A stretch of DNA of 63,547 nucleotides, the filler included, from Platydemus manokwari (taxonomy: Eukaryota), in the NCBI GenBank assembly GCA_037951405.1. It is 6 parts of 6 records of this genome, joined end to end, with 100 filler letters (N's around TTAATTAATTAA, not from the genome) between each part and the next. Parts side by side here need not be neighbours in the genome. Positions count along the whole stretch, not along the records: positions 29,697 to 38,954 come from JBBMOY011276650.1; 5 more parts are not named here. The stretch is one strand, 5' to 3'. Of this stretch, positions 29,697 to 38,954 are shown piece after piece (position 1 is the first letter of the stretch; each line of letters opens with the position of its first letter). The position numbers and the translations under genes are program-made. The notes beneath the pieces are model-generated. The model worked only from the letters and a program-made list of their open reading frames with translations, had not been told where the DNA came from and made no database searches.

Positions 29697-30300
29697 TTAT
29701 TAAACCGTAAGATTGCACAGGAAGTTCTTTATCACTATTATTAACTATGGTTTGTTCTATAGTAAATAAATAGTTTTCATCGACAGTAATAGTAACTAAA
29801 AATTTAACTCCATCTTCATTAACCCAAAATAAATTAACAGGTTTTTCAGGGCTTAATATTTCACTATCACTATTCCATATAGTATCGTTGTTGGGGAGTT
29901 TTACACTAGATAAATTACTAACTAAACCAATTTCAGCAAAATAAGCATTTTCTGTATTAGCCGGTGAAAATAATCTCACTTCAGGACTATTGTTAGATAA
30001 ATCTTGCTTATATTTTTTTAATATTAAATCATCAAATCTAAGTCCTTTTAGTGAAATAGAACCGGTGAGTGATCCAGATTCTATTTTAATACGCTGTACC
30101 CCGCTTTCTTCTTGAACAACAATATCAGCTGTAGGTTCTACTAAAGCTTTTAACTGTTGTTTCTTTAAATTTTCTGCTTTCTGCACTGCTATTTGCTGTT
30201 GCTGTTTTTTTTGTTCAGGTTTTACAACAAAATACTGCCAACCGAAAATTATACTTAAAGACAGTATAATAGCGGCTATTAAATTAATTATATTATTGTT
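29697..30300 (-). CDS. yidC: Rickettsia-type membrane protein insertase YidC, N-terminal about 200 codons (no start codon; 3' end cut by contig edge)
   Basis: Uninterrupted, intron-free frame [85 protein letters not shown] recognise this as the Rickettsia YidC TM1 plus periplasmic domain. The codon where ATG should be (30303-30301) reads GTC. Confidence 0.92.
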
Positions 30301-32899
30301 GACAACCTTGAAGTTATTAAGAACTTCAAAATGTCGAATATTACAACAAATTATGTTATTATCATGTACTTTGTTATCCTGTATTATTTAAGTGAATATA
30401 CAAGTTTTTTATTAGTGACTATAAGAATATAAAACTTTCATTAATTACAGCGTACATGGTAAATGAAAGCAATTTTAAGGACTTCGTAAAACTCATGGCT
30501 ATTCATAAAAGTCATATTAAATACGATTTTTAACAATCATCAAAAAATAAACATGATCATTTAAAAATTTCTCTTATAAAGTTTCAACTTTTAACCGATT
30601 TTTAAATCATAATATTTACAACTATTATATCAATATATATTAAGAATATAGAAGAAAGAATTAAAGAAATAAGTAGAAAAATTATATAATTGATAAAATA
30701 CGAAGTTAGCCGTATCTGATTGGGCGGTGATAAAATACACACACGGACAATTTCCACTTTTCTACCTTAAATCAAATCGTAACCCATTAATGGATTTCGT
30801 GAATTTAAGCGGTTTGAGATTGCTTTGTATTATATCAAGTTATATCGAGAAAAGAAAAAATTAACTTCAAAATATGCCTACACACTTCACTATTAGACTG
30901 ATATAAAAATCTATAAATTATTTTTTGACCATGTCATCTGAAACTGCCATTTACAGGAACTGTTTTTTCCGATATTTCTATAATTTATTGTCCAGATATT
31001 ATTTATGGATACAATCGTATGGAAGAGCTGTTTTAGTGAGATTTCTAAATAATCTATATTGGTATCAAATGCGATTGGAACGAGGAAGTTATATTGATAT
31101 TGTTTTGCCGCTGCTATTGAATTTGAATTTAAGAAATTCGTTCAAAAAATAAATTTTATAAAAACATTTAAATAAATTTTTAAACAAAAAGATTTTTTTA
31201 AATCGTTTTCATTGATTTTATATCTTAGAATTCAGTTCATAAGTGTATATGTTGTCTAAAATTTTCACAGGCTCCTTCGAAAATACCACCATGGAATCTA
31301 TCTCATTTCGTACCTTTAATTAAACTGTTTGTAATATTATCGAATTACATAACCCCATTGCAAACTATAAACCATTTTAATACACGAATTATTAAATTTC
31401 TACTCAACATGACTAGAATAGGACGAAAATTCTGGATTTTTTTAAAATTAAAAATAAAATATTGATTTGTCTTTATTTTATTTGAAATGGGAAAAAAATC
31501 GCATTTACATTGGAGTTGATATACTAAAGATATTCCTCTCGAAGAGTATTCACGTACTGGATTATCTTAACTTGATACTAGTTATTTTAGTTAATTATTT
31601 CATCATCTTACAGTGCTGAAGTAACTTTAAATTTTAATCCTTTGTGTAAAGTGCCAAAGGTACAACCATATAAATATTCATTGTGAATAAAATCTATATA
31701 ACTCCTAACTTATTACTACCATTCTAGTGTAGGGTCCTGATTCCGAACAACTAATTACTGACTCCAAAAATCGAAGGTTATAAGCCTTATTTCTAATTCA
31801 CGTACTACTCAGTAAAAAGCTAAAATTCGATACAAAAAACGTAACCAAAACTTGCCTTCCAATTAGCAGTTGGAAATCTTTACATCGATATTTATACTCG
31901 AGATCTGTGTGTAATTTTTGTGTCATGTTTGTATCGAATTTTAATTTCATCTTTACTTTTCCATGTATCTAAGGGGCTTATTGGTTTTTGTATGTGTGGG
32001 ATTGGTCAATCCCTATGTGCGTATTGTTGTGTGGCTATGTCCATTTTTCCAATTGATGTACTAAAGTAATGTACTATAACAAGTGTTCGTCTATCAATCA
32101 ACAATTAGATCTGAAAACTATATCACCAAAACAAATTACACTCGTAATCTAAGTAATTACAAAGAAACATCTTATAACTCACAATGGTTAATGACACAAG
32201 ACATGACCTATCGGGTGTGTCTGTTTGATGTCACGGACCTTAAATTTCCTTTTTCTGTTAGTAGATAGGCATACTTGAAATTTTCCTCGCATTGGCGAAT
32301 ATTTGAGTTGTTGCCATTTGTAGACATGTGCCTATCGATTCTTAGCTTCTAAATATGGATTCATATTAGAAAGAATATGATTGTATGACGGCACATGTGT
32401 TTATTGGATCTGTGTGTTGAGCCTTTTTACGGTTATTTCCTTTCATCACAAGGATTCCAAAATGCAAATCCATTTTTCTTTTGTAAGATTTTATCTTACT
32501 CAACACCAGGATTATAATTAATATTGTTATGTTTAAAACTATAATTAACTACAACGAAGTACACGCCTTGAAACTTGAAGCTAATTAATCCTAGAACAAT
32601 AATGATAAATCAAGAATCAATATTTGGCTATTTTTCCTCTTGCTTGATCCAATCTCATATACCAAAATGATGTTATCATATATTTTTATTATGGATTGGT
32701 TTGGTTATTCTAACTCATTAGATTACAATTAATATGATCTCATCGATAAAGATAAATAATGAATAAGAAAATCAAAGATAAGCCTTGAAAATAAAATAAT
32801 AATAATTAAAAATACACTCATATCATGAAAATTGTGAATAATAATAAAAATAATTCAGATATTTCACGAGAAAAATTTAGCTAGTAAATGATAGAATAT

Positions 32900-33630
32900 G
32901 TGACTTATTAAAAATAATAAATTCTGAATATAAATCGCAAAAGATAATCTCATAAATAACAAGAAAGAATTATAAATCATATATAATTTCGACGTACATC
33001 AATATCCAGAAGTATTTTAAGGTTTGGTCACTAATAATGTTATTAATATCAAAATATTAAGATAAACTATTAAATTATCGAGTGGTTATCTTAATTTTTA
33101 AACTCACGAAATAGGCGATTTATAATAGAATCAAAAAAATTCTAAGGAAGACTTAGCTATTATTGACCAACACCACGATATTATCAAGATTGTTAATGTT
33201 CTGTCGTAATATAATTTATGTAATCAATATGGATTAAAATTATAAAATCAATCAAACAATAAAAATGTATGAAGATAAGATCTAACAAATATCTTATAAA
33301 GATCTTAAAATGCATAAGAGCCCTATAATCACAAATAAAACTATTACTGGAGTCACTTAACGACCGAGCACCAATTAGATTTTTGATAAAAGGTGTGAAA
33401 TATAGGCATAGATTTTTCCTTATATTATTTTATCATGACCAATGAATGGTTATCGGAAACAAGTCTGCTTGATCGAAACATTATATTAACAATAAATGTG
33501 TACTCATGAGGATCATTTTTCGGTAATAATTTACAAAAAACTAGATAATACCAAATAGATTAAATCCAATTGTAGATGTTCTTGAAATAACTCAAATTCC
33601 TAGTTTGGAAATCAATAATCAAATATGAAG
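32900..33630 (+). mobile_element. Possible Penelope-like GIY-YIG endonuclease remnant
   Basis: Broken peptides KGVKYRHRF..WLSETSLLDR and DVLEITQIPSLEINNQ loosely follow the GVIY..YIGETS..R and LE..I..P.LN pattern. Heavily decayed. Confidence 0.25.
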
Positions 33631-35774
33631 GAAATTCGATGAAATAATGAGTTTCAATTTCAGTGATCTGAATGAGAAATTTAGCTGGAACGCAGCCGCA
33701 GATGTTATGAATCAACGGTTGAGTTCAATTGACGTTGAAGAAAAGTCAAGAAATTTTCTGCTTATATGTTATTTACAACAAATATTAAAGTAATTAAGTC
33801 CAGTTTACTTCTAATACTCTGAGCGTTTGATTTTTCATTTTTATCATAGATATTTGTAGGAATATTTTGCCTTGTGTCTTGATAATAGAAAGACTTTGAA
33901 AGTTTTTGATTACCTTTTTGATTAGCTTTGTTGTCTCGTCGTTGAGACAAAGAAAATTGGCACTATACCATGAAAGATGGATTGATGCGCTTTCTTTATA
34001 TATTTGAACTATTGTTGAATAGTTTACTGTGTTTTGTTATTATTATATTTCTTCATCAATTACATGACATTTTAAAACAATGTTTCTATCTATTTCCTTT
34101 TGTTAATCAGCTTTATCAGATTTACTTCATTTACATTCCTTTTAATCCGGCTTAAATCTTCATAATCTGTTTTAAATAACTTATTTTTTATCTTTATTGA
34201 TTATTACTGACTTTCTTTTATATTTGAGAGGAATAAAATAGTAATTTTAATAAAATTATTTTAACTACAATTTTAAATAACTTAATAAATTTCAAAACAA
34301 AAAATAATATTTTGAAATTTTATTAAATTATTAAATCTAAAGTAATTATTAAATAATTTAAATATTTTTATCTATATATGATTAAGCTTGATAGTTAAAG
34401 CTCTCTAGATAAAAATTTTCAAAAAGAATTAAGTTTGTTTAAAAATTGTTTTATTAGCTTGTATTAAATAAAAGTTAAAAAAAATAGTAGAGATGATTTT
34501 TTCCGAAGAATTCTCAATTTTAACTGAAGTAGCTACTACTAACAATATTATTGCTGGGCAGAGAGAAAATGTAAATTTTCTAAACATTCAGAATAGCCAA
34601 CGGTGGAGAAATTAGTGCTATATTTGGATATCGAAACAAGGGAGAATGAAAAGATACCCATGACTGTTAGTTTATATGGTCGCATTTATATTAATGCCAA
34701 AACAGAACCAGCTAGATTGGCACAATAACTCGACTAACAGAGAATGAAAGTGATAAGGAAAAATTGGCTCATACACACAGCAGCAATGAGGTGAATTGAA
34801 AAAAATGCTGATGTAAGTTGAAAAAGAATGTAAATGAGATCAAGTGGAAAATCCAAAAGATAGAAAGCCATGAATTTCGTAAAGCTTGGGAGCATCGATC
34901 GTGTATGTCAATACCTGACAATCAAACTTATTTACGCACCCATGAAACTATGCTGTTGAGCTTTTGTATTCACATATAGAAATCCGACTACAACATAAAT
35001 AAACAGATTAATGAAATGTATTTGTGTCATTCTGTAAACCCATATTTTATGACGCACATTCTAAAACGCGGAAAATCATAGAATTAACGATTACAAATGA
35101 CTTCAGTCACGGTTTCATAAAACAATGAATTACAAATCGATATCTATTATTAAAAGTCAGCGCATCAGACAGAATCTTAATCGTATTTCTATCATGATTC
35201 ATTGCTATCAAATTCTTATATAAATATTTATAAACACCTATAATTCATAATCAAATCGTCTGTGATTTGTCATGGATTCTCGATTACCATTTATGATATG
35301 ATTAACAAAACAATGAGTAGTTAAAACATTATTTCAGCACAAATCAAATTTGAGCTCTATTTTTACAATTAAATAATCAAATTAATGACAAATCAGTAAA
35401 ATTGTTGAGGGAAAATCATTTCAATTCCATAGTCTCGCTAACTAATCGATAAATCCGTTGGTATTCCTAGCTCTATGACTCCAAAAATAAGCTGTTTATG
35501 TACATGGCAACGTGGAGTGTATGTCTGATGGAGTTTTCGTGGTAATTATTTGTTAGGTACATGTCAGAATTTATAACTAACCATGCATTAATGTGGCAAT
35601 GTTAGTTCCATTTGTTGGAAGTTTGTGTCTGATATTTGAGATAATTTGAAAATAGAATATCAAAATCCTTCTCCTCTAATTTAGAATAATGTATCTTTGG
35701 GAAATGAAAATAAATGCAAACCAAATAATCGAACTCATCTTTAACAACAACGATCAATGTTGAGACAGGGAAAA

Positions 35775-35950
35775 CTTATTATTATCATCAATGTGTATTA
35801 TGTTTACACTTAATACTATTATTATTATGATTATTATCGATATTATAATGAATTGATTTTTCTCGTTACTATTATTATTGTCAGTAAAATTATTGTTTAT
35901 ATTATTTATAATAATAATAATAATAATTATTATTATTATTATTATTGTTA
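35775..35950. repeat. Degenerate (TTA)n/(TAA)n microsatellite
   Basis: Runs of ATT/AAT triplets, including a (TAA)n-to-(TTA)n switch near 35910-35947. Confidence 0.8.
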
Positions 35951-37136
35951 GTAGTAGCTACCCCGTTTAAAATTTAAGATTCAATGGAAGAATTCATTTG
36001 TACGCTTTTCGTAAATTATTATTAGTACAAACAAACCAAACATTTTTCAAACCAATTTAAAATCTTTTGCAGAGAGTTTGTACTACCAATTTTAATCAGC
36101 CATATTTGTACTTAAATGATTAAAAAATTTAATATTAAATTATAATAATCATTATTATTATTGATATCATATTTTCCTTCCATTATTATTATCATTATCA
36201 TTTTATTATTATCATCTTTACAAAATCTTATTATAAAGAAAAAATAATCACTCCATTTTCACCCGTGTCATTTTCGACTTCTCTAAGTGTCTGATGAAGT
36301 AAAAAATGATACAAAATATATTTAACACCAAATAATCACGGATAAAAGTAATAAAATATCAAACATATTTCTTTATCGAGCTGCTCAATTTTTAGTTCGA
36401 TCTCTAATAATACTTTATAATTTATTGCCTTTCTGGATTTATAAATTCATTGCAAGCTTCCTAGCCACAATTTAATTAATCTTGGACATTAAATTATGTG
36501 ATTAATCGGTGGTAAATTTATTTTCAGCAGCTATATAAATGAAAAGCTATTTTTGGAAATTTCTTAAGTCTTGTGCCGAAATACTGATGTGATCTGTAAG
36601 GAATTGTTAAAGGATAATTTTTCATTTATTATTTTATACATTTAATGATAACAGTTATGTTTCTGAAATAAATTCTTAATGACCGCATATAAACCCGAAT
36701 TTCATAAAAATTATCTAATAATAAGTTTATAATCAAGAAACTATGCAGACCACATATTAAGCTTCGGATTTGTTCCACTTGTACTATGGTATCAATCAAT
36801 AAGTTCAGTAAATATATAGTCACTCATGTGTGCAATAAATATTTTGTATTTAAAACATTGATGTCATTCTATTGGGCTGCCCTAGATTATGTTAAAAATT
36901 TCTCCCTTAACAACTAAACCAAAATTAACTCACATGATCTATCACCGAGTACGATGTTCATGTTTAATTTTTCATATGGTTAAGAGAATAAAATTTTTCA
37001 AAATATTTACTGTGGTTAAATATGTTTATTATACAGCTTGCGGTTTTGTTCTCAATAAATAAATATATCGGAGTGATTTTCAAATGATAAATAAAATATA
37101 AATATATATGATTGTTACGATGTGATCATTTATATA

Positions 37137-37292
37137 CAGAGCTTCAATCAACGAATTACCAAACGTGAATTATATATGTAAGCCGCTACTACTTTATAAA
37201 CCATGGATTGAAAACAAACAGAAAAGTCACAACAACACATTATATAAACAATTTATATAAGTAGTATTTATATAAGTAGTTCTTGGAGCCCT
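37137..37292. mobile_element. Possible short MITE
   Basis: TA-CAGAGCTTCAA ... TTGGAGCCCTG-TA, an imperfect 11-bp inverted terminus (9/11 matches). Confidence 0.35.
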
Positions 37293-38814
37293 GTATGGGT
37301 CAACCGAAAATTGGTAAAATTAGTCAAATGCGAGGCTTCATGTGTGACTCAATAGAGGGTAATAGAATATTGGTATAAATAAATAAATAATTTAGATGTA
37401 ACGTTGAAGAATCCTGACGTAAATAAATAACTTAAACACATAAGTAATTTTAACAATGGGTGGGGTTAATTTACACCAGATAAATTTTAAATCAAGATCA
37501 AATAAGTATTCGATAAGTATTCACTATTAAAATCGACGAGTACCGAAATCCAAATTCAAATCCAAACCCAAATATTTATTTCCAAAAATGGAAAATTCTA
37601 TAGTTACGGGTTTAGTGAGAGAAAATTCGTGAGATCGTATGTTTTGCCACCTCAGTTAGAGATGACTACAAATAAATTTAATCCAGCAGTTTTGGTTCAG
37701 ATTTAATTGTTATTATCGATCTTCACCACTCGCAATTTATAGCGACTGCACATCATGGATAAACAATTATTTGTACTTTTATGCTTTGGAATTTTTTATT
37801 GTTAATGTCGAATATATTTATACTTTCAGGCCACCACTAATTGTGGCTTCGGGCTATTTTTCAAAACGAGTTTACAACTCATGCAGTTATATATATGATA
37901 AAAAGGAAGGAAAATTCATATCAATCTAACATTGGAGAAGATGTCAGGACTTATAATACAGCTATGAAGAAATCTTACAAGTGTAATCTTGATAGGCTGA
38001 TGTATAATGAGGTATAGTTGGTTTAGATATGGGTTATTTCATCAATCTTCAATCTCGTATTTTTAAATTGAATTTATAAAATCAAATCACAATATCTCCG
38101 TCAAGGAGATCTTGAAATCGATTTGACATCAGAAAAACCATCTGATAAAAAAATTGATTTTACATTACGAATTATTTTCTATCAATAATTTATCGTCTAA
38201 ATTTATATTGAATCTCATCCACACATTGAATCGGTACTCAAATATCGACAAATCACACGATTTCCAGCCACATCTATCTGATATGGATAAAAGAAAATAT
38301 AAACAAACGAAACATTATATGTATATAAGTGATTTTTAATATATATTTTTTCATACCTAAACTAATCTAATACAAACCGTTTTGAGACCGATTTTAGAAT
38401 TGAATCATTGATATAATAAGCTTGATTAGAAAGGTGAGTGTTATATTAATTATAATAAGCACATCTCGTGTATTAATGATTTCAATGTTAGTGATTAAGC
38501 TTGTTAAACACTAGAAATATATAGATATATAGATATATATGTATATCAATGTATGTGTATATATAAATATAAATATAAATATATATTTGCATATTGTGAA
38601 TTTGCATAATTGAGGTGTTTCGATTCTGAATTTGTTATGAATCTCTCTCACGGAATAAAATATTGTTTGAAATCATTTTCGTTAGGAAATTTAAGCATGA
38701 TCGGTGAGTGTTTTTTTTTAACTGTTTTGGAGTTTAAAATTTGTCAAAGTGTTTTCTTTATTTTTTCGAAAGGATTGATTTTCTGTTTTCATGATTTTTA
38801 TTATTAAACGGAAA

Positions 38815-38954
38815 TAAAAATGATAATAATAATAATCATTATAATAATAGTAATAAAATAACAGTAACTATAATGATAATAATAATGATAATAATAATGA
38901 TAACAATATTATAATTTATGATATTAATAATAATCATGATAATAATAATGATAA
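38815..38954. repeat. (AAT/GAT)n microsatellite at contig end
   Basis: Imperfect AATAATGAT repeats running into the linker; likely cause of the assembly break. Confidence 0.85.

What the first reader, a model, noticed from the sequence alone, without database searches (positions are those of the whole stretch)
29697..30400. Intact Rickettsia yidC fragment fused to host-like DNA exactly at its start codon
Seen: 604 bp of stop-free, intron-free Rickettsia-type yidC sits at the end of a contig whose remaining 8.6 kb has no bacterial genes and looks like host intergenic DNA. The recognisable frame begins at codon 2 (AAC AAT AAT), the ATG position reads GTC, and the frame upstream closes at 30390-30388 with no ATG. 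The junction lies in a near-palindrome, GTTGACAAC. Inference: either a recent endosymbiont-to-host nuclear insertion, which would imply a Rickettsia association with this animal, or a library/assembly chimera. A breakpoint exactly at a gene boundary and at a contig end keeps the artefact explanation fully open.
Basis: partly seen in the sequence, partly recalled or inferred. Interest (0 to 1): 0.7.

Follow-up and report, generated by a model that had tools for sequence, protein, structure and literature searches.

The report
Rickettsia yidC piece misjoined to host
A real 600-base piece of a Rickettsia gene sits at the end of this animal contig, but it was most likely glued there by the assembler through a 21-base A/T-only stretch that both genomes share, so it is not a gene transfer into the host.

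Summary
Window 30300..29698 (minus strand) is a stop-free N-terminal YidC fragment, 97.7% identical in DNA to R. asembonensis. Likeness to Rickettsia stops at 30297. The remaining 8.6 kb has no ORF above 75 aa, no Pfam hit and no match to Rickettsia flanks.

The junction is almost certainly an assembly chimera. In run X19, the only run holding both halves (0.92 of sampled words), no listed contig crosses it.
- The Rickettsia-side contig (depth 4.4) fits up to 30297, then continues 60 nt unlike the window.
- The host-side contig (depth 9.2) fits down to 30277, with 57 further nt unlike the window.

The two parents therefore overlap by exactly 21 identical bases, 30277-30297 (yidC codons 3-9, all A/T). 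That is the signature of a short-k de Bruijn graph misjoin, and it explains why the break seems to sit at the start codon.

The Rickettsia part has about half the host depth. It is also 601/601 identical to Rickettsia contigs in two other runs, which continue into genuine Rickettsia upstream DNA.

A real nuclear insertion is not excluded, because contigs cannot prove absence. I give it about 7%. Interest is low.

The parts
29697..30276 (-). Rickettsia-only part of the yidC fragment (codons 10-202; first membrane helix and the start of the periplasmic P1 domain), cut off by the contig end
   Evidence: NCBIfam and Pfam YidC hits. 97.7% nt identity to R. asembonensis. 100% identical to contigs of runs X20 and X21.
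30277..30297 (.). 21-bp A/T-only stretch TATTAAATTAATTATATTATT (yidC codons 3-9, N N I I N L I) found in both the Rickettsia contig and the host contig of run X19; the window's switch point lies somewhere within it
   Evidence: table 8: X19 record 3 fits 30056-30297 and record 4 fits 30277-31781. Each has 57-60 further letters that do not fit the window.
30298..38954 (.). AT-rich (about 27% GC), non-coding, eukaryote-like host DNA
   Evidence: No ORF above 75 aa, no Pfam, tRNA or Rfam hit, and no match to Rickettsia loci. Depth is 9-12 in X19 and it contains a high-copy repeat.
31700..32500 (.). Very high-copy interspersed repeat of the host genome
   Evidence: Summed contig depth reaches about 25,700 in X19 against about 9 in the flanks, with many joints and loose ends.
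38813..38954 (.). AAT microsatellite at the other contig end
   Evidence: TRF: period 3, 47.7 copies.

Best explanation
The contig is an assembly chimera. The sequenced sample held the animal's DNA at about 9-12x word depth and DNA of a Rickettsia at about 4x. That Rickettsia's yidC 5' end is 97.7% identical to R. asembonensis and 96.8% to R. tamurae.

The first codons of Rickettsia yidC after ATG-AAT form a run of A/T-only bases. Twenty-one of these bases (30277-30297) also occur by chance in an AT-rich host region. A graph assembler working at a short word length (k of about 21) walked from the host path through this shared word into the low-coverage Rickettsia path.

The apparent breakpoint at the start codon follows from where this A/T-only run lies: between the G of ATG and the GCC of codon 10.

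Shown: the identity of the fragment, the end of likeness at 30297, the two parental contigs with their 21-bp overlap, and the depth difference. Inferred: that the 60 unlike bases on the Rickettsia-side contig of X19 are genuine Rickettsia upstream DNA (they were not printed), that X19 is the source sample or equivalent to it, and the assembler's word length.
For: table 8.
- X19 record 3 (302 nt, depth 4.38) fits 30056-30297 with record positions 1-242 and 0 differences. Its last 60 nt do not fit the window.
- X19 record 4 (1562 nt, depth 9.18) fits 30277-31781 with record positions 58-1562 and 0 differences. Its first 57 nt do not fit the window.
- No listed piece bridges 30277-30297 with unique sequence on both sides.
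- Depths are 3.7-4.4 on the Rickettsia side and 9.2-12.3 on the host side.
- X19 coverage fades at 29697-29796 (0.74), matching the contig end.

table 7: X20 (depth 1043) and X1 leave the window at the same base, 30297. They continue as ATTCATTCCTAGGTCTTAAATTTTCATATT, which is the reverse complement of the Rickettsia upstream region seen.

tables 3 and 8: the X20 and X21 contigs show 0 differences over the parts they cover, so the fragment shows no decay.

1.0% of 21-mers in the host part and 0.12% in eight Rickettsia loci are A/T-only. There are only 2^21 (2.1 million) such words. An 18-mer is already shared by chance between 8.7 kb of host and 53 kb of Rickettsia, so chance 21-mers between the whole genomes are expected in large numbers.

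the A/T-only run in Rickettsia lies directly after ATG.
Against: Logan contigs drop rare variants and show presence, not absence. A minority junction-bearing allele in X19 could have been pruned.

It is not proven that X19 is the sample the window was assembled from. If it is another individual, its host contig would be an empty allele, although that would still leave the 21-bp identity unexplained.

The 60 and 57 non-fitting letters of the two X19 contigs were not printed, so their identity is inferred.

A depth ratio of about 1:2 would also fit a heterozygous insertion.
Confidence: 0.86

Rival explanations
1. A real, very recent insertion of Rickettsia DNA into the host nuclear genome, joined through 21 bp of homology at the start of yidC. 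The rest of the insert is lost at the contig end because free Rickettsia reads tangle the assembly graph.
For: The contig exists in the assembly. The depth of the Rickettsia part in X19 (about 4) is about half the host depth (about 9), as for a heterozygous insert. Contigs cannot prove that a junction is absent (tool caveat).
Against: No listed X19 contig crosses the junction. The Rickettsia-side contig continues 60 nt beyond 30297 into non-window sequence, and the host-side contig continues 57 nt beyond 30277 into non-window sequence. A 21-bp perfect identity between the donor and the empty site is far longer than usual end-joining microhomology, but equals a standard assembler word length. 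The fragment is 601/601 identical to free Rickettsia in other runs, so it shows no decay.
Confidence: 0.07
2. A library chimera: one or a few physically ligated or template-switched molecules joining Rickettsia and host DNA, for example during amplification. Template switching favours short identical stretches.
For: The join lies at a shared stretch, where template switching in PCR or MDA could occur. Coverage is low, so a single chimeric read could decide a path (depths).
Against: No chimeric contig is seen in X19. An overlap of exactly 21 bp is explained more simply by graph word length. This cannot be told apart from an assembly chimera without raw reads.
Confidence: 0.06
3. The whole contig is bacterial (a Rickettsia chromosome or plasmid variant with rearranged DNA upstream of yidC).
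For: The GC content of both parts is similarly low.
Against: 8.6 kb has no ORF above 75 aa and no protein family hit. It contains microsatellites and a repeat present at thousands of copies in X19. It does not match the Rickettsia loci. Contig depth differs between the two parts. X20, X21 and X1 hold only the yidC part.
Confidence: 0.01

Closest known systems
De Bruijn graph chimeric contigs joining a contaminant or symbiont to host sequence (the 'partial (chimeric)' contaminated sequences that FCS-GX trims; PMC10898089)
   Same: A terminal bacterial span on an otherwise eukaryotic contig. The join lies at a low-complexity word shared by both genomes, the two sides differ in depth, and the parental paths both continue in the read-derived contigs.
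   Different: Nothing essential. The only curiosity is that the shared word coincides with the A/T-only first codons of yidC, which mimics a breakpoint at a gene boundary.
[quoted passage not shown]
   Same: Rickettsiales DNA next to animal DNA on one contig.
   Different: Accepted cases have junctions supported by reads, PCR or long reads, host-level coverage, and usually some decay. Here the junction is unsupported, coverage steps, and the fragment is identical to free-living Rickettsia contigs.
YidC membrane protein insertase of Rickettsia (closest genomes: R. asembonensis and R. tamurae)
   Same: The N-terminal 202 residues match the YidC N-terminal and periplasmic domain models. Identity to R. 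asembonensis is 97% aa and 97.7% nt. Against R. asembonensis, 10 codons differ synonymously and 5 non-synonymously.
   Different: Only the first third or so of the gene is present. It has no start codon in the window and lacks the catalytic C-terminal 60-kDa insertase core, because the contig ends.

Membership tests
YidC/Oxa1 membrane insertase (bacterial YidC, N-terminal part) | Match to the YidC N-terminal model (TIGR03593) and the periplasmic domain (PF14849) above their curated cutoffs | tested here: met
   TIGR03593: 160.1 bits against a cutoff of 58.25. PF14849: 109.8 bits against a cutoff of 24.
YidC/Oxa1 membrane insertase (bacterial YidC, N-terminal part) | Complete gene with a start codon and the C-terminal five-helix insertase core | tested here: not met
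   GTC stands in place of ATG and the contig ends at codon 202. The full-length equivalog NF002353 scores 207.8 bits against a cutoff of 365.
Endosymbiont-to-host nuclear insertion (LGT) | Junction carried by independent reads or contigs from the host sample | tested here: not met
   No listed X19 contig bridges 30277-30297, and both parental contigs run on into other sequence. Raw reads were not available, so absence is not proven.
Endosymbiont-to-host nuclear insertion (LGT) | Same coverage on the bacterial and host sides | tested here: not met
   Contig word depth is 3.7-4.4 against 9.2-12.3. These are contig-level depths only.
Endosymbiont-to-host nuclear insertion (LGT) | Insert differs from living donors (decay), or is present in symbiont-free individuals | tested here: inconclusive
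   No decay: 601/601 identical to X20 and identical to X21 over the 547 bases it covers. That fits a free bacterium but also a very recent insertion. Symbiont-free individuals could not be tested.
Short-k de Bruijn graph assembly chimera | Both parental sequences are present in the reads and share an exact word of about assembler k length at the join | tested here: met
   21-bp overlap at 30277-30297 between X19 records 3 and 4. Such A/T-only words are expected to be shared by chance.
Short-k de Bruijn graph assembly chimera | The assembler actually used a word length of 21-22 or less | not testable with these tools

The most novel reading that the evidence does not exclude
A genuine, very recent and possibly heterozygous insertion of Rickettsia DNA into this animal's nuclear genome, joined by an unusually long 21-bp homology at the first codons of yidC, in an individual that also carries the free bacterium.
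Probability: 0.07. Interest if true: 0.5.

Novelty: not a real feature. Interest (0 to 1): 0.1.

Why it matters
If taken at face value, this contig would be counted as a Rickettsia-to-animal gene transfer. The evidence makes it a worked example of a false one: a symbiont or contaminant read path joined to host DNA through a shared A/T-only word. The practical outcomes are to trim 29697-30276 from the host contig and to flag the sample as containing Rickettsia DNA. The yidC fragment is 97.7% identical to R. asembonensis and identical to a strain seen in other 2024 runs. Whether that DNA reflects a true infection of this animal is a small but real open question.

Tried and rejected
- I scanned metagenome contigs for 30 bases of the host side of the junction, hoping to see the native host context. 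There were 0 matches.
- Three exact-protein look-ups tried to fetch the X19 contigs and read their non-fitting ends. The queries were the host ORFs 30931-31149 and 30331-30429 and the yidC partial 29779-30066. None is on record.
- Rfam gave only a sub-threshold miRNA match (27.9 bits against a gathering score of 100) inside the high-copy repeat. I rejected it as chance.
- The promoter and terminator scan around the junction was no different from shuffles.
- The near-palindrome GTTGACAAC lies wholly on the host side and plays no part in the join, so I treat it as chance.
- I did not run the large protein searches. The protein's identity was already settled by the family scans and the genome loci.
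- The host species could not be named, because run organisms are coded and no host gene lies on the piece.

Full report
**Observation.** The piece is window 29697-38954. On the minus strand, 30300..29698 reads 201 sense codons without a stop. GTC (30303-30301) stands where Rickettsia genomes have ATG. Further upstream the frame closes at TAA 30390-30388, with no ATG, GTG or TTG in between.

The 202-residue translation is an N-terminal YidC. It matches NCBIfam NF002353 at 3e-61 over profile positions 3-216. It scores 160 bits on TIGR03593 yidC_nterm (cutoff 58) and 110 bits on Pfam YidC_periplas (cutoff 24).

A scan of one genome per bacterial species puts it in Rickettsia. R. asembonensis and R. 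tamurae are both at 97% aa, then Ca. R. kotlanii and R. australis at 90-92%. Torix and bellii-type symbionts are at 80% or less. At DNA level, 29697-30297 is 97.7% identical to R. asembonensis (14 mismatches in 601, no gaps) and 96.8% to R. tamurae. Against R. asembonensis, 10 codons differ synonymously and 5 non-synonymously, as expected for a functional gene of a related strain.

Alignment with four Rickettsia genomes shows their well-conserved upstream region (..TTTAAGACCTAGGA-ATG-AAT) has no counterpart in the window.

The other 8.6 kb is 20-34% GC. It has no ORF longer than 75 aa, no Pfam hit for the ten longest ORFs and no tRNA. Rfam gives only a sub-threshold match, and blastn finds no match to any fetched Rickettsia locus. 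The stretch contains TAT and AAT microsatellites, one of them at the far contig end.

**What the public runs show.** Of 24 runs that hold part of 29697-31500, only X19 holds both halves (0.92 of sampled words). X20 holds 0.34, which is the Rickettsia share of the query (604 of 1804 bases). The others hold 0.19-0.26.

I laid the contigs of X19, X20, X21 and X1 on 29697-32696. The key pieces in X19 are these:

| Record | Length | Depth | Fits window | Record positions | Remainder |
|---|---|---|---|---|---|
| 2 | 291 nt | 3.7 | 29777-30067 | 1-291 | none |
| 3 | 302 nt | 4.38 | 30056-30297 | 1-242 | last 60 nt do not fit |
| 4 | 1562 nt | 9.18 | 30277-31781 | 58-1562 | first 57 nt do not fit |

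All three fit with no differences. No listed piece bridges the join.

Each parental sequence therefore passes through the place of the join and goes on into something else. The two overlap by exactly 21 identical bases, 30277-30297: TATTAAATTAATTATATTATT. These are yidC codons 3-9 (AAT AAT ATA ATT AAT TTA ATA).

X20 (one contig, depth 1043) and X1 (depth 19) leave the window at the same base, 30297. They continue as ATTCATTCCTAGGTCTTAAATTTTCATATT, the reverse complement of the genuine Rickettsia upstream region seen. X20 shows no difference over 601 bases and X21 none over the 547 bases it covers. X1 shows 10 differences.

**Reading.** A contig that switches from one parental path to another inside an exact 21-base word shared by both is what a de Bruijn graph assembler produces at a short word length. 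Twenty-one is a common smallest k. That is my general knowledge, and the method of this assembly is not known to me.

The shared word consists of A and T only. In the host part, 1.0% of 21-mers are A/T-only. In eight Rickettsia loci, 0.12% are. Only 2^21 such words exist. Already 8.7 kb of host and 53 kb of Rickettsia share an 18-mer by chance. Between a whole AT-rich animal genome and a whole Rickettsia genome, chance 21-mers should be plentiful.

The same fact explains the feature that made the finding look special. In Rickettsia, the A/T-only run lies between the G of ATG and the GCC of codon 10. A misjoin through it necessarily appears to sit at the start codon. Codon 2 of the window (AAC, against AAT in Rickettsia) is host sequence that merely resembles the gene.

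The contig ends inside yidC where X19's Rickettsia coverage fades (depth 0.74 in 29697-29796).

The caveat is that these are contig-level word depths.

**What remains open.**
- Contigs drop rare variants, so a minority junction allele in X19 cannot be excluded.
- X19 is only presumed to be the source sample, or equivalent to it.
- The non-fitting ends of X19 records 3 and 4 were not printed, so their identity is inferred from X20 and X1.
- A 1:2 depth ratio would also suit a heterozygous insert.

I therefore keep about 7% for a real insertion through an unusually long homology. I keep about 6% for a physical library chimera, where template switching at the shared stretch is possible. Raw-read mapping across 30277-30297 would settle all three readings.

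**The rest of the piece.** 30298-38954 behaves as nuclear DNA of an AT-rich animal, with unique depth of 9-12 in X19. An interspersed repeat at about 31700-32500 reaches a summed contig depth of about 25,700. It shows many joints and loose ends, which indicates thousands of diverged copies. I could not name the host, because organisms are coded and no host gene lies on the piece.

**Comparison with known things.** Chimeric contaminant-host sequences and true endosymbiont integrants are both recognised categories in assembly screening, and FCS-GX (PMC10898089) handles them separately. Rickettsial DNA in an animal genome project has been analysed before as symbiont versus LGT (Trichoplax, PMC3641634). 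This case fails the tests for an integrant that could be applied here: junction support and equal depth (decay was inconclusive). It meets the testable features of a k-mer chimera.

**Attempts that led nowhere.**
- A metagenome scan for the host side of the junction gave nothing.
- Three exact-protein look-ups meant to fetch the X19 contigs gave nothing.
- The promoter and terminator scan was at background level.

**Verdict.** The junction is most likely (about 86%) an assembly artefact. The feature is not a real biological structure. The only biological content is that Rickettsia DNA was in the sample. Its yidC fragment is 97.7% identical to R. asembonensis and identical to a strain seen in other runs. 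Interest is 0.1.

Noticed in passing
window 31700-32500: Very high-copy interspersed repeat of the host. Summed contig depth in run X19 reaches about 25,700 against about 9 for the flanks. More than 1,500 contig pieces were laid, with many internal joints and loose ends. It has no ORF, Pfam or credible Rfam identity. It may be a non-autonomous element family.
   Followed up: partly
window 29697-30297 (runs X20, X21, X19): The Rickettsia fragment is identical, base for base, in 2024 runs filed under different coded organisms and studies: X20 at depth 1043 (601/601), and X21 and X19 at depth 3-4 over the parts they cover. Either one strain is widespread across hosts, or there was carry-over or index hopping from a heavily infected sample. 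The roughly 0.4% depth ratio would fit the latter.
   Followed up: no
one search run list: Runs holding about 0.19 of the words, meaning only part of the Rickettsia stretch or a relative's conserved part, include indoor and air metagenomes.
   Followed up: no
window 38813-38954 and 35817-35950: Imperfect AAT and TAT microsatellites. One forms the far contig end, which is a typical short-read assembly break.
   Followed up: yes
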